Shown one piece after another: positions 15,481 through 29,106 of a DNA stretch of 64,000 nucleotides (position 1 is its first letter; every line of letters starts with the position of its first letter). The notes under the pieces were generated by a model, which saw nothing but the letters and a program-made list of their open reading frames with translations, was not told the origin of the DNA and made no database searches. Source of the DNA: Podarcis gaigeae (Eukaryota); NCBI GenBank assembly GCA_964106915.2, contig OZ066925.1; one strand, 5' to 3'. The translations under genes were made by a program, and so were the position numbers.

Positions 15481-15677
15481 ATCTTCATGAAAGCTCTGTT
15501 TGACTATGATCCCAGTGAGGATAAAGCAATTCCCTGTAAAGAAGCTGGACTTCCTTTCAGAAAAGGTGATATTCTTCAGATCATGAGCCAGGATGATGCA
15601 ACTTGGTGGCAAGCCAAGCTTGAAGGTAATGCCAATCCCAGGGCAGGCTTAATTCCTTCAAAGCATTTCCAAGAAAG
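15481..15677 (+). CDS. MPP7: MPP7 exon (SH3) [24 protein letters not shown]...[10 protein letters not shown](R)
   Basis: ttccag acceptor, gtgagc donor, 197 nt, phase 0-2; SH3 motifs ALFDY, WW and GLIP. Confidence 0.97.
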
Positions 15678-16182: not shown

Positions 16183-16247
16183 GAGGCTTGCACTAAGAAG
16201 ATCAGATGTACAGGTTCAGCCCTTGAAAGTTTCCAATAGAAAATCAT
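16183..16247 (+). CDS. MPP7: MPP7 exon (HOOK, N-part) RLALRRSDVQVQPLKVSNRKS
   Basis: tttatag acceptor after a pyrimidine tract, gtaagt donor, 65 nt, phase 2-1; ends in a single T. Confidence 0.95.
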
Positions 16248-18316
16248 GTAAGTCTGTTTTAAAATCATACTCCTTTGTTCACACAAATATGGCTTGTATC
16301 AGCTCTTTTTAAGATATGGCGCTGGTATCTTCAGATATATCAGCAGGCCAAAACCTGTGATGCTGTAGGAAAGGGATTTTCGTTAAAGAAAATGGCTTAC
16401 CCCCGCTTCCAACATCAATACTTATGCAAAACCTATTCCCTACAGTGAATAAAATAATAAATATGCCAATCTCTAATTATTGGAAGGGCATTCTTAATGA
16501 CTCACTGAGTATTTAAATACTACACAAAGGGGACACATGTGAAGTCAGTGCTTTTTTTCAGGCTCAACCATCTACTTTTGAAGCATAGTCCAACAATATC
16601 TGAAGGTTGTGTGAAGCTGCTTTGGAGTATGTTTTTAGAACATATCAATAAATATCAGGCTGATATATGATCTATTACCACTCATATGCTTATCAAATTT
16701 TCTGTCAGCTTTTCTTATTAGAACAGAATTGGACTTATAAGAAGTGGCATATATAAGGCATATGTTTTAAAATGTAGCAAGAATATTCTAGCAAGTACTT
16801 TTTCTGTGTGCCTAATTAGAATTATATCAAAAGCAAATGATGTGAAAGCACAGTATCTCTCATCATGGACTAAAAATAGCATGTTTGAAGGTTTCAGAGT
16901 TCTAGTTTTTTAAAAAACACAGTAGTTCATTCTTCTATAGAACAAAGACAGTAACATTGCTCTAAACCAAATCATTTTATTGGTGTACTTGAAGTTGGAC
17001 AGCAAGATGATGAGCCACTTTCTGTGAGGTTTTGGAAAATTAATATAAAATGGTTGCATGGAATTATGTGTGTGTGTTGCAGGTCAGGAGCATGGAGAAG
17101 CAGTCATTTATATTTGTGAACTAGCTCTATTTCTGACATAGGATAGCACTGGACTACATTTGCATGAAATTGGTGACATTTGTTATATGGTGTAACTTAT
17201 GCACGTGTCCTTAAACTTGTCATTCATTTGATGTAATATGTCTTCAAAAGAGAGCATGAACCATCAGTAATTAAAATCAGTTAGACTAATACTGGCCAAA
17301 ACAACTTCTGTCCAACAGAACCATGATTTTTACCATGGTAGTTTGCTTTTATATTTAAGCTGTATCACATGTGTTCTCATTCATATGAGTAATAATAACT
17401 TAATATTGTTAATCCATAATTAGCATTGTGTAATGGATAGGGTGGTTAATCTCTGAAAGACCTAGTTACGTGTATAATCAAAATAGTAATTTTGATATTA
17501 AATATAAACTGAATGATATACTTTTTAAAATTTTCACTAAGTGTGAGAGAAGAAATATTTAATAACTGTCAAATATATTTATATAGTTCAATATCAATAT
17601 CATGTGACTTAGTATGGTGTGCATTCAAGCAAGATGCAACCTATTTTATAATTTTGAGAATTAATTGTGCACAATTCAAATTTTTATGTGGCGCCCAAAC
17701 ACTGAAAGTAAAACTCATTTTGTCGAATTCTACACTGTGTTCACTCTGTGTAATAAAAGCAACTCCTTATACCACTATCTGTTTTGTCAGCAAGCCAAAC
17801 ACATCTTCATTCTTCTTTCAAACCTAGTATTCTTCTGACATTTAGTGAGGAGTCTTCCTCTAATAATCCCTACTATTGCAAGGATAGCAAACTTTGACCT
17901 CGCTTTTTATGCCTATTTGCAGTCCTAAATTATATAAAGTCAGTGTCATCTTGTCTTGGGTCACTTGCTGCTATGGTGACGGCATTAACACAGGCTTCAT
18001 ATTTGCAGTTTGCTGTCTCATCAAACAGAAGAGTGCATTTGATGAATTTCAGTATTTTTGCCTAAAAGTTATCCGCTTAAAAAAATACATTAGCATTTTT
18101 TTGTTTTTATGCATTCTCACGCAAATCTTTTTACGTACAAATTTTGTTAAATGTTTTCGATATAGCTTGGAAATTCAATTTTATACCTTAAGATTTTTAT
18201 ATATCCACAAAAATCTTAGTGATCCTGCTTATGATAGTTTGTCAGTTGATGCTCATTTATAAAAGGAGCTGCTGTGCGTTGTGATGCAGGCAAGTGACTA
18301 AACTGAATGACTCCTA

Positions 18317-18672
18317 AAGGTAAAGGTAAAGGTACCCCTGCCCGTGCGGGCCAGTCTTGACAGACTCTGGGGTTGTGCGCCCATCTCACTTAAGAGGCCA
18401 GGGGCCAGCGCTGTCCGGAGACACTTCCGGGTCACGTGGCCAGCGTGACAAAGCTGCATCTGGCGAGCCAGAGCCACACACGGAAACGCCGTTTACCTTC
18501 CCGCTGGTAAGCGGTCCCTATTTATCTACTTGCACCCGGAGGTGCTTTCGAACTGCTAGGTTGGCAGGCGCTGGGACCGAGCAGCGGGAGCGCACCCCGC
18601 CGCAGGGATTCGAACCGCCGACCTTTCGATCGGCAAGTCCTAGGCGCTGAGGCTTTAACCCACAGCGCCACC
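18317..18672 (-). mobile_element. Sauria SINE
   Basis: (ACCTTT)n tail at the left end, GGTGGCGCTGTGGGTTAAA head at the right end, TSD TGACTCCTA (18308-18316, 18673-18681). Confidence 0.92.
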
Positions 18673-18846
18673 TGACTCCTACTTTCCCCCAAATATACTG
18701 GATAGAGTCATGCATCTGTTGTGCATACCAAATGGCAAACATTTAGAACCTTGTCGCAAAGCAGTTGCATGTTCAACTAATAATGAAACAGATCCTTGAT
18801 ATAAATAATCAGTTGTGTTCCAATTTACTTTCAAGTAATTTGTGTT

Positions 18847-19188
18847 GGCGCTGTGGGTTAAACCACACAGCCTAGGACTTGCCGATCAGAAGGTCGGCGG
18901 TTTGAATCCCCGCGACGGGGATGAGCTCCCGTTGTTCAGTCCCGGCTCCTGCCCACCTAGCAGTTCGAAAGCACATCATGTGCAAGCAGATAAATAGGTA
19001 CAGCTCCGGCGGGAAGGTAAACAGCGTTTCCGTGCGCTGCTCTGTTTCGCCAGAAGCGGCTTAGTCATGCTGGCCACATGACCCGGAAGCTGTACGCCAG
19101 CTCCCTCGGCCAATACAGCAAGATGAGCGCCGCAACCCCAGAGTCGGCCACGACTGGACCTAATGGTCAGGGGTCCCTTTACCTTTAC
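18847..19188 (+). mobile_element. Sauria SINE
   Basis: GGCGCTGTGGGTTAAACC head, GGTCCCTTTACCTTTAC tail, TSD TAATTTGTGTT (18836-18846, 19189-19199). Confidence 0.92.
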
Positions 19189-20684
19189 TAATTTGTGTTA
19201 CTTCATCAGCTCAGTTCTTTTGTCAGTTTCCTTTCTGTGCATCCTACAACTAGATTTCTTTTGCATGCTTAATTTTTTCTTTATCCATTCTAACCAAACT
19301 TGCCTTTCCATCTTAGAAAAATATATAAGAAAGTGGAACCATAATTATTATTATTTGTAGTGTGGCATGCTCCTGTTCAGTACACACATGTACACAGCCT
19401 TTTTTCCTCCACCCCCAGTCAGCCAAGATTTTGTTTCAGTCACATTTTAGTAATTTTGTATTGTACATTGTTTTAAAATCTACATTTTATTTTATTTTAT
19501 TTTATTTTTATTTTAATCTTGTCAAGTTGCTTTGAGATTTTCAATAGAAAGTGACTGAATAATCATTAACATAATATTGCTCATTGAGCATGCTCAGTCT
19601 TCAGTGTGCTGTTTTGGAGTTTCTTGGCTATTTCCTCCCATAATGCCCCCCCCTGAAATCTCCATTTTGTGCTGTTTTAGCTGTATAAGGGCTTGATAGC
19701 TAAGAACTGAGATGGCTAACAGTATTTATAATTCATGCCAAATATAAGTAGGCAACGTTATGGAACTGAAATGTTGAATACTTTGGTTCACATCAAAGTA
19801 GCAGGTACCCGCATCGGTGACTAATAATAATGCAACTTCATGCATTGCGCTCCATGCAGGAAGCTTTCCTGTTGATGTAGCCTCCAAAGGGGTCCAAGAA
19901 TGCCAGTGGAAATCTGGTCTCTCCTTGTGAATGCAAGGGGCTTTCATGGTAATGATCTGGCCAAGGTTTGGGTTAACAGATCTCACACACTGCTCAGTTC
20001 ATAAATGCAACACCCTTAATAGTTCAGGTGGGAAAATTTATCCTCATTGAAAAAATAAATGCTGAAGAAGGCTTTTCTTCCCCAGTAAGCATTTGTCCTC
20101 TTCTTCATTTCTTTCTCAGCTAAGCAACTAAGCTCTTCCTGGGTTCAAAGAAGGTGGGCTATGACAAATTTAGCAGTTGCCTATAATTTAATTCTTTCTT
20201 AACAGCGCAATCCAAAGTGTTTGGATTTGGCAGATCTTGGGCTTTCTCGGCTGAGAGGATAATGGTATTGCTCTGTAAGAGCAACTCTCTCATAATACAT
20301 TGTATCATTTGTATAGAGCACATAAATGAACTAATCCTTTGCCTCTTAAGAACGCATTCAAGTAGGTGTCTTGTCCCTTGTGATTGTGACTTCCTTGTAT
20401 TGTAAAGGGACAAGAATCTGAATAACTACATGCATGTGCCCTTTAAAACTGATATGCATGTGTGTTGTGCCCTGATATCTGTACCATAGTATGACATTTC
20501 ATCAGAAGCTACCTGTGTAAAGTAATGATGCTTGATCAAGGAGCAATAAAAGTGGTACTAGCAGAAGTTGTGTCTTTGGTGGGAGGGGAGACTTTGATGG
20601 GCAAGCAGGCAGAGAAATAAGCCCAAAGAAAGTTTGTTCTAGTGACTTGTAAGTTGTCTTTGGGATGTGTCTAATAAACTAGGG

Positions 20685-20822
20685 CAGGGGTGGGGAGCCT
20701 GTCGCCCCCATATGTCACTGAACTACAGCTCCCATCCTTCATGACCACTAGCCATACTGGCTAGGGCTGATGGGAATCAGAGTCCAGCAACATCTGGAGA
20801 ACCTAAGGTTCCCTACTTCCGG
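20685..20822. mobile_element. Palindromic hAT-like MITE
   Basis: CAGGGGTGGGGAGCCTG...CATCTGGAG...GGTTCCCTAC; same family as 6650. Confidence 0.75.
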
Positions 20823-20829
20823 GCTCAGG

Positions 20830-21025
20830 CAGAGCTTTCCAAACTGTGTGCCACGACGCATTAGTGTGTCAGCTGCAATGTGTAGGTGTGTCACACAAAC
20901 GCTCCCTGTTCTCTTATAAGGGGTTAGTTTAAACTCTGGTTTGCTAGTAAAGCTGAATTACTGTGTCACAAAATGATGCATGTCTAAAAAGTGTGTCACC
21001 AATATGAAAATTTTCGAAAGCTCTG
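20830..21025. mobile_element. hAT-like MITE
   Basis: TIRs CAGAGCTTTCCAAA / TTCGAAAGCTCTG; degenerate 8-bp flanks ggctcagg / ggctagag. Confidence 0.75.
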
Positions 21026-21587
21026 GGCTAGAGGAAGTCTCTGGATGAAAGCAACAACCTGTAGACAACTTAACTTCAACTTAAGAGTGTAACCATTTCA
21101 AAATTACAATTGAAAACCCAGTGACTCTTATTTATGATGCTAAGCAGAACATGACTAGTTAATGTGTTGTTTTTTCACCCCAGGACTGGTACAAACCTTT
21201 CTGTCTCTTAAACAGTGTTAGGGGAGCATAGCCTTTGCATACACACCAAAAAACCTTATACATTTTGAAAGTGAGGTTCTGTCATTTCCTACTCCCATAA
21301 AAGAAATTGGGGTACAGGCTTTTGCAGCAAAATGTTGAACGTGCCGTGCATCATACTTCTGCAAAATATGCTCTTAACCTGTTCTTTATATTACTCAGCT
21401 CTGTTTTTCCCATTTTATTATGTGCTGAATATAATGTAAATCATGTCTGCTTGTCTTTTGGCTGTTCTAAGCTGAGGAAACAGTTGAGTGTGGTAGGTGT
21501 TTTACCCCCCCCCTTTTATTCTTCCATTATGTCTTCAGTCCATGTAATCACTTTGCATCCTATTTTTCCCCCTTTTGCGCTTCTCAG

Positions 21588-21599
21588 AGGAAATTGAAG
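21588..21599 (+). CDS. MPP7: Candidate 12-nt alternative microexon of MPP7, (x)EIE(E)
   Basis: Long pyrimidine tract with TGC motifs (ctttgcatcctatttttcccccttttgcgcttctcag), then AGGAAATTGAAG, then gtacat. Symmetric phase 1-1. GCATG/TGCATG downstream at 21835-21847. Confidence 0.5.
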
Positions 21600-22805
21600 G
21601 TACATGTACAAGTTTCCCTACTGGGCTGCAAGTGATGGCTTAAAAACTAAGCATTCTAGGTCATCACTGACTTCGAGGCAATTAGAAAATAATCCCTATA
21701 GATAGCAGTATATGTAGTCATAACAGCCAGTTGCTTTGTTGTTGCTGGAATTGTTGTTCCAGTCTTGAGAATCGTGGTAGCAGAAGACTGTGAACCTGTT
21801 GCTTTCTGCACGTAGTTCCTACAGCACAGTACTGGCATGTGTGCATGAAGATTCCTGTGGGGTAAGGCACAGGGATCCACATGTGTTATCCCATTGTCAG
21901 ATGTGGTTTCTTCCTTTGTATTTTTCCTTCTCCTCACATAGCAGGAATTTTGGGGGCCCAACAAACAGATCTGCCTGTTTCTGCACATGGGCCAAGTATG
22001 CAGAACAGGAGTGAATGTGTGCTAAAACCTCTGAATGTTAGCAAAGTAACATAACATAAGCAGATATGTTAACACAAGACATTTCCATGGAGCTAAAGAT
22101 GATGTCAGTCCTATTGTATGGCTCTAATAGATTATCTTTCTTAAATTCAAACTTTGACACTGAATAAAGTGGATCTTTTCCAGTCATTAGGGGTGCAATT
22201 TTGGAACACAGCTTGACAGATGCTTTACTGCTGTGGTGTCAATCTTTGGGGGACTTTTCACTTGCAGCATACATTTAAACAGTTGCAGCTCTATCTATAT
22301 CTATCTATCTGTATATACCCCAAAGCTGTAAAGTATTTTGTTAGACATTTGGTATATTAAAATAGGCACCAATACTATTTTATACCTAAGAAGTTATATT
22401 CATTAAAAATACCCTTTCTGTCTGATCCATTGAGCCAAATACAAAAACTCCTGATATTCTTTGTAGATTTCTTTACCTTTGTGTTTCAGCTGTTGTATTT
22501 TTTATCCTACATTAAAATATAAAGTAGAACACCTTTTAAAATCACTTCTTTATTTTCTGTCATGAATAAGGCAATAAAACAGTGAAAAGTTAAATATGCA
22601 TGTTGCTGTACTCCAAAATCTCTTGCTCAACTTCAGAACAACACAGTGATTTATTTTTAAGCAGTAGCATATTGAAGGCTTTTTATGCTGTGCTTTCTGC
22701 AGTTGTCATTTTTAAGTAACTCTTCTTTTGCATTCATGGCTGGGCATCTAACTATTCTGCTTTATTTCTTGGCTTTTGTTCTGTACGCTTTTACACTTCA
22801 TCCAG

Positions 22806-22847
22806 AGGAAGCTGAATGTGCTGGTCACAACAGTGGAGCCCACATAG
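22806..22847 (+). CDS. MPP7: Candidate 42-nt alternative HOOK exon of MPP7, (E)EAECAGHNSGAHI(A)
   Basis: Pyrimidine tract ending ttcatccag, strong donor TAG|gtgagc, symmetric phase 1-1. The peptide aligns without gaps to the MPP3 segment preceding GLRRSF (recalled as ETCDCEGYLKGHYVA). Confidence 0.72.
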   Translation, partial: RKLNVLVTTVEPT

Positions 22848-23162
22848 GTGAGCAGTTGCTTACAAAAGACTCTCTTTCTTTCTCAGCTTTTTCCTGGATG
22901 GCTACAGAGTTTGCAGGTAATGGGCATCACTGCATGCAATGAATCTGCTAGATTAAAAAATGGCTCACTGGATTTGACACAAAGGATCTGCATCCTAACC
23001 GCAACATATGTTACTAACATTGAAATATAGCATGCATTGAAATGCTACCTTGAATATGAGGAAATAATTTACTTGGGTAGAATTTGCAAAGAAATTTAAA
23101 TACTTGTCCTAGACAAAATGCTAGGCTGGCTATATTCCATCTGACTACATTATTTTTCTATC

Positions 23163-23400
23163 ACAGTGTTCTTCAATCTTGGGTCCCAGATGTTATTGAA
23201 CTACAACTCCCATCAACCCTTATCATTGAATAAGCTGGTAGGAATGGTGAAAGTTGTAATCTCGTGACTTAGCGTAGGGATAGCCATTGTGCTACCTGAC
23301 ACATGTTGTGGGCTACAATTTTCATCATCCCTGACCATTGGCCACTCTGACTTGAGTTGGTGGCTCCATAACATCTAGAGGGTACCATGTTGGCTACTGC
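23163..23400. mobile_element. Two adjacent degraded palindromic MITE copies
   Basis: cagatgtt...actacaactcccatc core present twice. Confidence 0.6.
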
Positions 23401-24034
23401 TGACTTACTGGGAATTAAGTTAGTACTGTTGGATGGCTGGGATTACTTTCTTGTCAATGAGCCAAGTAATGATATCATGGACTGGCTCATCTTTGCTCAC
23501 CTATTCTTGAAGTGGTTTACTGGTAATTCCTTAGAAGATGCTACACAAGAACCATTGTAAGTTGAACATACCATATTAGGTTTTCTTTATTCTTCAAGGA
23601 AGGGATGTGGGAAGAGGACACAAATTATTGGTAAGAATTGGCCTATATTGGGGTATAAAATGTGGTAGAATAGGGAAGGAGGTTGAGATCCTGGTGATGC
23701 AGGAACTACTCAGGGTAAATCAGCAGCACAAGAGTAGGTGGAAACTAATTGAGGGCATGCTACATAATTTATTAATATATCCATGTCACATGTTTTATTA
23801 AAGGGGAAGGTGACACTGCAGATAGGTAGACTGGTAGAGAAGTTTGTGTTTAACCATGCTTCCAGATAGATTTTAGAAGCTGTGCTCTAAATCTGTATGC
23901 CTGACATTTGCATGCCACAGGAGGCCTACCAATCCAAACAGAATAGCTTTCACTGTTAAAGTCCTTCATGATTTGGGACCTCAGTAGCTGAATAATATTT
24001 TCTTCCCACTTACATTTATCTGTGCCTTGAAATA

Positions 24035-24260
24035 CAGTGGTACCTCTGGTTACATACTTAATTCATTCCGGAGGTCCGTTCTTAACCTGAAACTGTTCAT
24101 AACCTGAAGCACCACTTTAGCTAATGGGGCCTCCTGCTGCTTCGCCGCCGCCGTTGTGCAATTTCTGTTCTCATCCTGAAGCAAAGTTCTTAATCCGAGG
24201 TACTACTTCTGGGTTAGCGGAGTCTGTAACCTGAAGCATATGTAACCCAAGGTACCACTG
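24035..24260. mobile_element. Tc1/mariner-type MITE
   Basis: TIRs CAGTGGTACCT / AGGTACCACTG; TA on the left, TG (mutated TA) on the right. Confidence 0.88.
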
Positions 24261-24324
24261 TGATCACCTGAAATTCTTCTCCTAGTACCCTTTGCATACT
24301 GAGGTGCAGAGAGAATAGTCACAA

Positions 24325-24680
24325 GGGAAAAGGCCTTCTAGTTGTGGAATGCCAGAGAGGCCCACCTGACATGCATTTTAATGCCTTTCTGGTGCCAGGC
24401 AAAGAACTTTTTTTATTTTCCCAGACATTTTAAAATTGATTCTATTTATTAAATGAAATAATTAATTCTTTAATCTTTGCATGCTGCTGTGATTTTAGCA
24501 TGGTCATTTTAGTTCTGTGAAATTCATTTTGGGACCTCTGTCTTACTGATTATTGCTGTGATTTCTAATCTTGAGGTCTCTGTTTTATGGTTGTTTTATT
24601 TACTTTAATGATTTCTTGTTTTGTTTAAATAGTTTGTGATCACTGACATCACTCAGGGAACTGCTGTTGGGAGACTAATG
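24325..24680 (+). mobile_element. Degraded LINE 3' end (L2-like)
   Basis: ggccttc...tggaatgcc...ggcaaagaac...ttttcccag followed by a T-rich tail. Confidence 0.45.
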
Positions 24681-25652
24681 AATAATAGCAGTTCCACTGA
24701 TGACATTCAAATTAGCAACTTTAGTTGATCTCTTCTGTTGAAATATATATTTTCTTTAACTTAGTAGAATTGAGTAGGATGGATTATCAACCTTAACTCA
24801 CACTTTTTGTCATACAGAATAAAAATGCATAACTAGGCAATTATCATAAGATTATTCTGAGTAGTTCATGGGATGTGTGGAGATACACCATAATTCATAG
24901 ATAATGAGAGGGGGAGAAAACTCCATCACTACCTTTCCCTTCCTCCTACATACCTCTACCAGCAGGGCTCTATGAGCCTCCATGTAGGTGATACTTACAT
25001 ACCCTGAGGTATCTGCAGTCAGCCTGTTCAGTTTGGTATCAGTCTTGGCCCAGTATGTTCACTGATCTCCACTGTTCCAACCAGGATCTGAAGCAGGTTA
25101 GCAAGCGTTAGTTTAGAAGGGAACCTTGAGAGTGCCAATGCAGATGCACTCTAAGCTAAGGCTTGGAAGGAAACTTTTGCTGGAAAGTTGGAGGAAGAAG
25201 GGGAGACCATTGGGTCACTCCCAGTTTCTTAACTGGATACAGGGTGGAAGTGTTACCGCTTCATTCGGTTTTCATGAAATGTTATTTCTGGGATTCATAA
25301 TGTGAAACCACAGTGGTATCAGACATACAGAATAAAAACTTTTTAAAAGCCCTAGTCATATGTCAGGAATTGGGTGTACTGTTATAAGGTGGCCTCAGAA
25401 ATGAACTTCCTACAGCCTGGAGTTGTCCAGAAATAATTAACTATGTTTTTACTGTGCTAGTCAATGATATGGTGCTGGTTTAACAGAGAACTTGCTATTT
25501 GTCTATAATGTATGTCAAACTGTATTAAATTTGACACACAAAGCATGTATATCATTGTAGATTGTGAGCAGGGCTTTACCATTTATGTCTAAATGATACC
25601 TACTTTTTGTGAGATGTTTGCTGTTGATACTTATTGGAAACAATGGCTTGTC

Positions 25653-25708
25653 TTTTTCTCTATATACATTGAAGACAAAGGGTTGTCTTCAATGTATATA
25701 GAGAAAAA
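25653..25708. repeat. Perfect 26-bp inverted repeat with 4-nt spacer
   Basis: TTTTTCTCTATATACATTGAAGACAA-AGGG-TTGTCTTCAATGTATATAGAGAAAAA. Confidence 0.95.
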
Positions 25709-28148
25709 AGTGCATACAATTTTGAAAAAACAGTGATTGATATTAAAAGGGCAGCAGTGAAGGACAGAAGTTGAACTAATTTTCATGTGGTTTAATGGTT
25801 CAAACCATGTAGTTAAACTATTTTGTTGGTAGTGAACTGTTTGCATACTATTAAAAACAATAATTGGTTTCACCCTTTTGGAGAAAACTATTTAAATAGC
25901 TATTTATCAACATACTTAAAAACTCTATAAACTCAATATAAATACTGGTTTTAGTCTCCGAGAAGAATGGTGTGAGCCATTACCAGAAGAGGGGGTGTTG
26001 CTCCCTTTTGTTTCTACAGCTAGTTGCTAGGAACATGTTCAGTGTGTAGCATTTCTAAAGTGGTTGATTGCACTTGGAATAGTCTAACACTTTAACCTGA
26101 CCAGGAAGAGGGGATTAGCATTTGGGGGTGGGAAGTCCTGTTCAGTGTTTGCTAATTTGTTACAATCTAGTTTGATCATGAAATGGGATCAATGCAAAGG
26201 GTTCTGCACCCAGGAGCTGGCTTAATTTTCAGTGCCTTTCACTGATGATCTGTGGAACAAAACAGAGGACAAACAAAAAAGTTTTTGCTTTCCCTCAGGT
26301 ATGTACTTCTAGAGGGGAGCTTAAGCCTTTTGAGCAGCAACTATTCTTTTGTAGAGTAAGGAGGGGCATTCAGATACCCTCCAGGAGTGCCTCTCCGACC
26401 AGCAGGAAACAGGGTTAGCTTGCAAAGTTGACTCCACTATTGGAAGGAGCTACCAGGCTGCCATAAGCACCATGGAACCAGTGAAGGCCTTATTTGGTGC
26501 CCCCAGCTTTCATTTTTCAAAAGTACATGTCTCTACCCCTCCTAGGAAAAAATTATAATCAAAGTGTGCAGGTACCCTTCTAAGCACCAGGAATTTCTGT
26601 GAAATGATTAGCCAGTGAGTGAAGTGAGAGCTGTGATTGATAAGTGAGCTGTTTAGACACCAGGCAGTGGGAAAACTTGGGGCTCCAAATAGCTGCTGTC
26701 CCCCTTTAGTGCCCTTTTCCTGCTTCTGTCTTTTATCCTAGTCCTTGGATCCACCCAGCTGCTGCTCTATTTGTTTCACTTTGCTTCCTGCCATCCATAT
26801 AGAGCAGCTGCTTCAGAAACTCTTTGAAAATGTGGGAGAGGAAATCTGGGGATCCTTCCCATTGCTGCTTTGTTTGTTTTGCTGCCTATTGGAATGCAGA
26901 GTGGGTGGCTGCTTGATAGATGCCTCAGTAGAATACTGGGGGGGTGGGGGAAGGTTATGACAACCATTTGTTGTTCCTGCTACGTACCCTACAATGGGGA
27001 TTGTTCCAAAGTTGTTTGGGTGAGGGCAGTGCAGAGGCTTCATATTGATGGTGATAATAATTATCACATTTTCCCTGGTTCTTTTTTATGAGTGAGCAAG
27101 TGCATAAGTATTACTACTACTACCACCAACATCACCTTTTCCCTGCTTGTTCTCAAGTGTTGTTGTTTTGCCAGGGGTGGGACATTTCCAAAGAATCATT
27201 CTCATCATCACCTTTTCCTCTTGCCTGGCACACATCAAGGATTGTTCCCAAGTTGTTTGGGAAAGGGAGTGCTCAGTGCAAAGGCAGAAACACTATTACT
27301 GACATCTCTTCATACACCCCTTATTTCAACATCTACTCTGATGAGTTTTTTAAATAACTTTCCTTTGCATTTTCCTTCCATTTCTATTTGTTGTTGTTGA
27401 TGTTGTTGTTTATTAAATTTGTATACCACCCTCCATCTGACAATCACAGCTTTAAATTTTTGCCTATTCAGGTGTAGTGATTCAGAATTATTCCTGCAGC
27501 ATGTCAGAAGTATTGTATTCTCTGGCACATCAGCATGCTGGGATGCAGTTGTGATGGAGTTCAGGGTGGGAGTGATAGAATTCTTTGATGTTTATCTGTG
27601 TAACTCATTCATTTAAGGGACAAGACATTCCTGTGGCTCTATTAAAAGCAGTCACTATTGACTCTGAGCACTACCATTTTGTCTCACTGCTGCTCCCATG
27701 GTGTTTATGAAGGTTCTGGCCATACCAATAGTGCACCAGAGGATGCAAAGTATTGAAACGTAAAGAAGTATCAAGTGGCTTGAATTAAAGGTGATCATAC
27801 TGATACGTTGGGCTTTTCTAGGCAACATAAAAGGCAAGCAGATCTTGGTAAGGACAAGCAACAACTCAGTGAAGATCTGTCTCAGCAGTCAAGGAGGCAT
27901 GAGATCTATTTCCCATCATAAGAAGCCTGTCCTGGATTGCTCAGAGTAGAACATCTGACTCAAGTGACAAACACGACTGTAGACTGGATAAGCTATGTCG
28001 TCTAATATATTGACTGTTTCTCCCCTTAATTATATTTTATCTTGTGCCCCATTTAATGATGTATGTGTTATCAGAACAAAGCATATTGGTGTTGCAATGA
28101 TTAAAATGGATTTTTAATGTAATCCAAGACTGTAAAGCTACTAATAGG

Positions 28149-28239
28149 CATAGCTGTCAACGTTTCCCTTTTTTAAAAGGGAAATTCCCTTGTTCTGAAT
28201 AGGATTCCTTGCAAGAAAAGGGAAAAGTTGACAGCTATG
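28149..28239. mobile_element. 91-bp MITE with 9-bp TSD
   Basis: TIRs CATAGCTGTCAAC / GTTGACAGCTATG; perfect TSD ACTAATAGG (28140-28148, 28240-28248). Confidence 0.92.
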
Positions 28240-28935
28240 ACTAATAGGTTTTTAGAAACATTCATCGCTGTTGTTGACTTTCTTTGAACCAGTGTGGATG
28301 TCAAATATATGATCTCAGCTGGGAACGTATTTAGATAAAGAATGAGTGTCTTCTGTTGATTCTGCAAGCACTTATTAAAATATCAGTATCTGGGAGTTGG
28401 GGTAATTATCAGTATTTTGGGGGTAGGGATATCAGCAAATTTTGCAAGTCTGTATTACAAATGTGACATTTCCCCATATTTCTGTTCTCAGTGCTTAACA
28501 GAGATCTAGCCTGCTATACCAATATGATGTTTTTGTTTTTTAAAAAAATACATCATTCCTAATTTTCACCAGCAACCCATACACCTTGAAATTGGCACCT
28601 TTTGAATAAAAATAATTTGGTAATGTGATTAGGCCACAATCCTATCTAAAAACATAGGGGGACTTCAAAAGTAAACACAAAACAATGGAGATTAAAAAGA
28701 CGTCAAATTTCACCCCATGTGGCTCCCACATGCCCTTGCATGAGCCTAATCAAATATATATGGAAAACAATTTGGACTTTGAATTTGGTCCTTTAAGATA
28801 TAAGGAAGAAAAACTACTAAGTAACAAAAGTAACAAATGCCCATATGAAGGAGTGTTTGTTACAGATGGGCTACTGGCTAGGCTGATGACAGTAACCCTT
28901 GCTTCTGCTTCTTTTTTTAAATCTCGTAACTACAG

Positions 28936-29106
28936 CTGGTTTCAGGAGGAGTTTCCGTCTCAGCAGAAAAGATAGAAAAACAAACAAGACTATGTATGAA
29001 TGCAAGAAGAGTGATCAGTACGATACAGCAGATGTCCCAACTTACGAAGAAGTAGCAAAGTATAGACGACAGCCCAATGAGAAATACAGACTTGTTGTCT
29101 TGGTTG
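28936..29106 (+). CDS. MPP7: MPP7 exon (HOOK C-part, GK start) [12 protein letters not shown]...TYEEV...YRLVVLV(G)
   Basis: actacag acceptor, gtaagt donor, 171 nt, phase 1-1. Confidence 0.97.

What the first reader, a model, noticed from the sequence alone, without database searches (positions are those of the whole stretch)
22806..22847. Hidden 42-nt HOOK-domain cassette exon in MPP7, similar to the MPP3 exon
Seen: strong acceptor and donor (ttcatccag|AGGAAG...CACATAG|gtgagc), 42 nt, phase 1-1 matching the surrounding intron. It encodes EEAECAGHNSGAHIA directly before GFRRSF. TGCATG (RBFOX) lies at 22597 and 22931, and ACTAAC (QKI-type) at 23013. Knowledge, from memory: canonical human MPP7 joins NRKS straight to SGFRKSF, whereas paralogue MPP3 has ETCDCEGYLKGHYVA here, aligning without gaps (E, C, G, G, A identical). 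Inference: an ancestral HOOK exon retained as a regulated cassette, altering the SH3-HOOK-GK module in some tissues.
Basis: partly seen in the sequence, partly recalled or inferred. Interest (0 to 1): 0.8.

Follow-up and report, generated by a model that had tools for sequence, protein, structure and literature searches.

The report
Annotated MPP7 HOOK three-exon cassette array
The 42-letter exon is real, but it is already annotated in wall lizards and most jawed vertebrates; it is the last of three small optional exons that add an acidic patch to a cell-junction scaffold protein, and in lizards and snakes it can make protein only together with the first of the three.

Summary
The exon at 22806-22847 is real: same length, phase and donor from gar to mammals, and the exact counterpart of a 42-nt MPP3 exon. 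It is not hidden. RefSeq/UniProt isoform X1 of Podarcis muralis and P. raffonei carries this very peptide, and orthologous isoforms are annotated from sharks to mammals. The exon is the third of an array (21 nt at 21472, 12 nt at 21588, 42 nt at 22806) and is coding only after the 21-nt exon. Birds, crocodilians, turtles, mammals and sharks escape through a tandem acceptor 3 nt downstream (Tyr); all five squamates checked lost that escape, and 0 of 35 squamate isoform entries carry the exon alone, against 43 of 122 elsewhere. The inserts lower the net charge of the disordered basic HOOK from +11 to +4 or +2. Both RBFOX sites are conserved; the QKI site is not. No paper found on these MPP7 exons beyond a mouse 21-nt microexon in a table. 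The scan had noted the stop and the 12-nt exon only on this same window.

The parts
15481..15677 (+). MPP7 SH3 exon (constitutive, context)
   Evidence: Pfam SH3_1 E 6e-10; tblastn of Podarcis isoform X1; boundaries read
16183..16247 (+). Upstream constitutive HOOK exon U; ends in T (phase 1), which sets the stop-codon rule
   Evidence: ends in T in every MPP7 locus that holds it and in kea MPP3
21472..21492 (+). 21-nt microexon M21 (SEETVEC, ends in G); the gate that opens the frame for the next two exons
   Evidence: 21 nt with ag / gtaggt in all 8 MPP7 loci and in MPP3; in annotated isoforms
21588..21599 (+). 12-nt microexon M12 (adds EIEE); starts AG, so also a stop after U; TGC in its acceptor tract
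   Evidence: identical in finch and gecko, present in colugo, gar, Pogona, Crotalus, lost in Anolis; not in the Podarcis isoforms seen
22597..22602 (+). TGCATG (RBFOX-type), 209 nt upstream of the cassette
   Evidence: at -200 to -216 in all 7 amniote loci, absent in gar
22577..22805 (+). Conserved intron block on the acceptor side
   Evidence: last 100 nt 94-95% identical in squamates, 82-84% in finch and colugo, 68% in gar, against 47-71% for the constitutive acceptor flank
22806..22847 (+). 42-nt cassette exon C (EEAECAGHNSGAHIA after M21 or M12; stop after U); an untested AG 6 nt inside would give a 36-nt form
22931..22936 (+). TGCATG (RBFOX-type), 84 nt downstream of the cassette
   Evidence: at +84 to +87 in five squamates, +113/+124 in finch, GCATG at +92/+118 in colugo
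28936..29106 (+). Downstream constitutive exon D (GFRRSF ... second half of HOOK, start of GK)

Best explanation
C is the third member of an ancient array of optional in-frame exons (21, 12 and 42 nt) inside the disordered HOOK linker of MPP7; MPP3 has the same 21- and 42-nt pair. Shown: all introns are phase 1; U ends in T, M21 and M12 end in G, and M12 and C start with AG or AA, so U-M12 and U-C give a stop while U-M21-(M12)-C-D is open. Podarcis isoform X1 is U-M21-C-D. Shown: a tandem acceptor 3 nt inside C gives a coding Tyr form without M21 in birds, crocodilians, turtles, mammals, a salamander and sharks; in squamates it gives a stop (gecko) or is gone (Podarcis, Anolis, Pogona, Crotalus). 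Inferred: inclusion is tissue-regulated, M21/M12 as SRRM3/4-type neural/endocrine microexons and C with RBFOX input. Inferred (about 0.45): the acidic insert, placed just before the basic GFRRSF..RKDRK stretch, lowers HOOK net charge from +11 to +4 or +2 and so tunes binding of HOOK partners (PALS1/MPP5, calmodulin, 4.1-type proteins, membrane) and the SH3-GK closure, as the I2/I3 inserts do in DLG1. Inferred: any squamate transcript with C but not M21 has a stop five junctions upstream of the last and goes to nonsense-mediated decay.
For: Splice sites, length and phase invariant in 8 MPP7 loci and kea MPP3. Spliced cDNA contigs from two public RNA runs of a salamander-like animal hold U-M21-M12-C-D. 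207 insert-bearing isoform entries all begin with M21 or the 39-nt Tyr form, none with M12 or the 42-nt form; skip forms also exist. Podarcis X1 XP_028607220.1 and XP_053266571.1 match the window exactly over the insert. Flanks more conserved than the exon, 1 synonymous against 25 non-synonymous codon differences (not independent counts), the pattern expected of regulated cassettes. A 21-nt 'neural-up' Mpp7 microexon is differentially spliced in mouse islets, PSI 0.13 vs 0.40 (PMC8395343 Table S2). HOOK pLDDT below 50 in both models. MPP7 binds PALS1 through SH3-HOOK (PMC7662862, PMC12781724).
Against: Most isoform entries are automatic predictions. The mouse microexon matches M21 in length only; its position in the gene was not verified. 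No binding or localisation data exist for the inserts. The structure models are low-confidence (mean pLDDT 58-61). The insert's residues vary freely across vertebrates apart from its acidity.
Confidence: 0.8

Rival explanations
1. In squamates C works mainly as a poison exon: RBFOX-positive cells without the microexon activator include C alone, make the junction stop and lower MPP7 by decay; the coding M21+C form is a minority product.
For: Every acceptor at +0 or +3 gives a stop after U in five squamates; C-alone coding isoforms are common in other amniotes (43 of 122 entries), so C-alone splicing is a real ancestral event; the RNA sequence is more constrained than the peptide.
Against: Absence of C-alone proteins in squamates follows from the stop itself and says nothing about how often it is made; M21+C is the X1 isoform in nine squamate species; gar has the same strict state, so it may be tolerated drift.
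Confidence: 0.12
2. Squamates replaced the +3 escape by the AG 6 nt inside the exon (22810-22811), giving a coding 36-nt form without M21, so there is no interlock.
For: The D-to-E change created an AAG at +6 in all five squamates, and T plus that form is open (Ser or Phe).
Against: None of 35 squamate entries uses it, including all seven Sphaerodactylus isoforms; weak score (-3.5 bits). Podarcis X3 and X4 were not seen.
Confidence: 0.06
3. A decaying relic of the MPP3-like ancestral exon, no longer spliced in this lizard.
For: No reads obtained here; the 12-nt neighbour was lost in Anolis.
Against: Intact sites and 94-95% conserved flanks among squamates while most of the intron does not align; annotated in both Podarcis species.
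Confidence: 0.02

Closest known systems
MPP7 isoform X1 of Podarcis muralis (XP_028607220.1, UniProt A0A670J7G2) and P. raffonei (XP_053266571.1)
   Same: Identical insert, M21 plus C, between the same two constitutive exons.
   Different: Database predictions only; they do not use M12, which is intact in the window; no statement on regulation or on the junction stop.
MPP3 HOOK exons (kea locus)
   Same: 21-nt and 42-nt exons at the same place, phase 1, same donors (gtaggt, gtgag), upstream exon ending in T, tandem acceptor at the 42-nt exon, 6 of 15 residues identical.
   Different: No 12-nt exon looked for or seen; peptide more diverged; most MPP3 entries include both exons, and whether the few that lack them are true skip forms or annotation misses is unknown.
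DLG1/SAP97 HOOK inserts I2/I3 (PMC9307800) and CASK exon 23L (PMC8208546)
   Same: Alternative splicing inside the disordered SH3-GK linker of a MAGUK; charge distribution of the HOOK differs between isoforms.
   Different: Different subfamily, no sequence homology tested; I2 and I3 are net basic, the MPP7 inserts are acidic; effects on calmodulin binding and localisation are shown for DLG1, not for MPP7.
Mouse Mpp7 21-nt microexon, chr18:7430395-7430415 (PMC8395343, Table S2)
   Same: Same gene, same length as M21, alternative, classed neural-up.
   Different: Position within the gene not verified here; the paper lists neither the 12-nt nor the 42-nt exon in that table entry and gives no function.

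Membership tests
Conserved alternative cassette exon | Canonical AG/GT sites, frame-preserving length, conserved in relatives | tested here: met
   42 nt, AG..GT in 8 MPP7 loci from gar to colugo
Conserved alternative cassette exon | Both inclusion and skipping transcripts exist | tested here: met
   Inclusion in cDNA contigs and isoform entries; skip and M21-only entries in gecko, snake, birds, crocodilians, Xenopus, sharks. Not shown by reads in Podarcis
Conserved alternative cassette exon | Junction reads in this organism | not testable with these tools
   U-C junction codon is TAG; stop in all nine loci for the 42-nt form
Homologue of the MPP3 HOOK exon | Same position, length, phase and alignable peptide | tested here: met
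MAGUK HOOK splice insert (DLG1 I2/I3 type) | Lies in the disordered linker between SH3 core and GK | tested here: met
   Between the SH3 match and the YEEV strand that aligns to MPP5; pLDDT below 50 (low-confidence model)
MAGUK HOOK splice insert (DLG1 I2/I3 type) | Changes partner binding or localisation | not testable with these tools
   Only net charge computed
RBFOX-regulated exon | Conserved TGCATG within about 300 nt | tested here: met
   Upstream site in 7 of 7 amniotes, downstream site in 5 squamates and finch; chance 0.01-0.02 per 30 nt
RBFOX-regulated exon | Inclusion responds to RBFOX loss or binding shown | not testable with these tools
   No data
QKI-regulated exon | Conserved ACTAAY near the exon | tested here: not met
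   +166 here, +155 Anolis, +252 gecko, absent in Crotalus, finch, colugo, gar
SRRM3/4-type microexon (for M21 and M12; C is too long) | 3-27 nt, frame-preserving, TGC close to the acceptor, neural/endocrine inclusion | tested here: inconclusive
   Lengths fit; TGC 11 nt before M12 in amniotes; mouse 21-nt exon neural-up but not mapped; dependence on SRRM3/4 not testable
Poison (NMD) exon | Stop more than 50 nt upstream of a later junction when included | tested here: met
   True only for inclusion without M21; at least five junctions follow
Poison (NMD) exon | The stop-bearing transcript is made and rises on NMD block | not testable with these tools
   No reads
MPP4 HOOK small exons | Same exon array in MPP4 | not tested
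   Recalled from memory only; the MPP4 entries retrieved were partial

The most novel reading that the evidence does not exclude
A junction-built stop codon acts as a logic gate: the 42-nt exon is coding only after the 21-nt microexon. Other amniotes keep a tandem-acceptor escape that yields a 589-aa protein, whereas squamates lost it in two steps (GAT to GAA, then AAG to AGG), so the same splicing event changed from making a protein isoform to lowering MPP7 by decay in cells that have RBFOX but lack the microexon activator.
Probability: 0.15. Interest if true: 0.55.

Novelty: already known. Interest (0 to 1): 0.28.

Why it matters
The exon itself adds nothing new to databases. What is of some use: MPP7, usually studied as the 576-aa epithelial form, has an array of HOOK inserts kept since sharks, in the region that binds PALS1, and no searched paper examines it. 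The array gives a ready, ordinary test of how an acidic insert tunes a basic MAGUK HOOK, and a compact natural case in which two base changes at a tandem acceptor turn a coding isoform into a stop-bearing one in one reptile lineage.

Tried and rejected
The 6,000-letter limit would in any case not have covered C with either constitutive neighbour. The large protein search was used once because the word search could only see 40-127-aa proteins. A 34-nt candidate exon at 20120-20153 with strong sites is not conserved in six loci and is rejected; a 54-nt candidate at 21942-21995 has no match in any isoform and was dropped. Mouse and Anolis short isoforms had no contig on record. PDB search with exon D alone found nothing. 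AlphaFold models were too weak for a fold search. Two primary papers were not held. (bacterial promoter scan) is irrelevant to this locus. Isoform counts are database entries, not independent events, and the queries favoured M21-bearing forms.

Full report
Setting. The window holds MPP7 on the + strand (SH3, HOOK and GK motifs; Pfam SH3). Podarcis muralis and P. raffonei proteins match its exons almost perfectly, so the source is a wall lizard (inference; species not identified).

Observation. The 42-nt stretch 22806-22847 has an AG acceptor and a gtgagc donor; TGCATG lies at 22597 and 22931 and ACTAAC at 23013. The surrounding intron runs from 16248 to 28935, phase 1 at both ends. On a rough matrix the donor is among the four best in the intron and the acceptor is middling. 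The kea MPP3 exon peptide finds its best match of the whole intron here.

The stop. The upstream exon U ends in T. Joined to the cassette C, the split codon is TAG; joined to the downstream exon D it is TCT. These two and C are the only clearly conserved blocks inside the intron in the Gouldian finch, with invariant splice sites, and they recur in gecko, anole, bearded dragon, rattlesnake, colugo and gar. M12 also starts with AG, so it too is coding only after M21; it is lost in Anolis.

Already annotated. A finch prediction carried the orthologous exon. The large search gave a full-length frog isoform, and two region searches from it returned isoforms with the insert from sharks, gar, bowfin, paddlefish, teleosts, lungfish, amphibians, mammals, turtles, crocodilians, birds and squamates. 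Podarcis isoform X1 is U-M21-C-D, identical to the window over the insert (XP_028607220.1, XP_053266571.1). Two intron-free contigs from public RNA runs of a salamander-like animal contain U-M21-M12-C-D, which is direct transcript evidence outside lizards. Skip forms, M21-only and M21+M12 forms also occur.

Homology with MPP3. The kea MPP3 locus has a 21-nt and a 42-nt exon at the same place, in the same phase, with the same donors, an upstream exon ending in T and a tandem acceptor at the 42-nt exon. Six of 15 residues of C are identical. The pair thus predates the MPP3/MPP7 split (inference). MPP4 was not tested.

The escape and its loss. In finch and colugo C begins cag AAG AT: the second AG gives a 39-nt form that reads Tyr after U, and such 589-aa isoforms make up 43 of 122 C-containing entries in birds, crocodilians, turtles, mammals, amphibians and sharks. 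In the gecko the 39-nt form reads TAA; in Podarcis, Anolis, Pogona and Crotalus the second AG is gone. None of 35 squamate entries has C without M21, nor any of 39 ray-finned entries (gar also lacks the second AG). An AG 6 nt inside the squamate exon would open the frame but is used by no entry seen. All 207 inserts begin with M21 or the Tyr form. These counts are non-independent database entries, and the lack of C-alone proteins follows from the stop; it does not show that the stop-bearing RNA is made.

Regulation. The 100 nt before C are 94-95% identical among squamates and 82-84% to finch and colugo, above the flanks of the constitutive exons (47-71%), and codon differences within C are almost all non-synonymous: constraint acts on the RNA, as is usual for regulated cassettes. 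TGCATG is kept at about -205 in all seven amniotes and at about +85 in five squamates; ACTAAC is not conserved. By the known position rule RBFOX would activate from the downstream site and repress from the upstream one (established knowledge, not tested). A 21-nt neural-up Mpp7 microexon is differentially included in mouse islets (PMC8395343); it fits M21 in length, but its position was not verified.

Protein effect. The insert lies in the HOOK between the SH3 core and the strand before GK; both models leave it disordered, at low overall confidence. HOOK net charge falls from +11 (skip) to +4 (M21+C) or +2 (all three), while the Tyr form of birds stays at +9. MPP7 binds PALS1 through SH3-HOOK (PMC7662862, PMC12781724), and HOOK inserts change charge distribution, calmodulin association and localisation in DLG1 (PMC9307800). 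I infer that the array tunes HOOK interactions in neural or endocrine cells (about 0.45); nothing here shows it.

Limits. Human sequence was not used. Nine paper searches found no study of these MPP7 exons; most subscription journals and splicing databases are not covered.

Verdict. A real, ancient, already annotated alternative exon, better described as the third member of a three-exon HOOK array with a junction-stop rule. Interest 0.28. The squamate loss of the tandem-acceptor escape is the one point I could not find described; its functional weight is unproven.

Noticed in passing
window 21588-21599: 12-nt microexon intact in this genome, gecko, finch, colugo, gar, Pogona and Crotalus but deleted in Anolis carolinensis; not used in the Podarcis isoforms seen. 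Teleost isoforms show a 5-residue version.
   Followed up: yes
L005:42708-42725: In Sphaerodactylus a second GT 6 nt after the 12-nt exon gives an 18-nt form (adds GT residues) in annotated isoforms X1 and X4.
   Followed up: partly
proteins P0166, P0174, P0210, P0211, P0288: Some mammals (marmot, mole-rats, false killer whale) have a further 6-residue insert after the cassette (D-A-V-C..); no counterpart found in colugo by a simple motif search.
   Followed up: partly
proteins P0111, P0344, P0349: Frog isoforms replace the cassette by a different 7-residue piece after M12.
   Followed up: no
proteins P0042, P0251: Mouse isoforms X5 and X6 start inside the HOOK intron, just before M21, and lack L27, PDZ and SH3; may be an internal start or a prediction artefact.
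   Followed up: no
window 17522-17713 and 22322-22440: Short non-exonic blocks of the same intron conserved in other squamates and weakly in finch or colugo; possible regulatory elements.
   Followed up: no
window 20120-20153: 34-nt stretch with the strongest acceptor score of the intron and a good donor, frame-shifting, not conserved in six loci.
   Followed up: yes
window 18307-18680 and 18845-19185: Two GC-rich SINE copies in opposite orientation (Sauria SINE by memory, not tested) about 170 nt apart in the intron upstream of M21.
   Followed up: no
L011 (Pogona) exon D: Agamids change the otherwise invariant G of GFRRSF to S.
   Followed up: no
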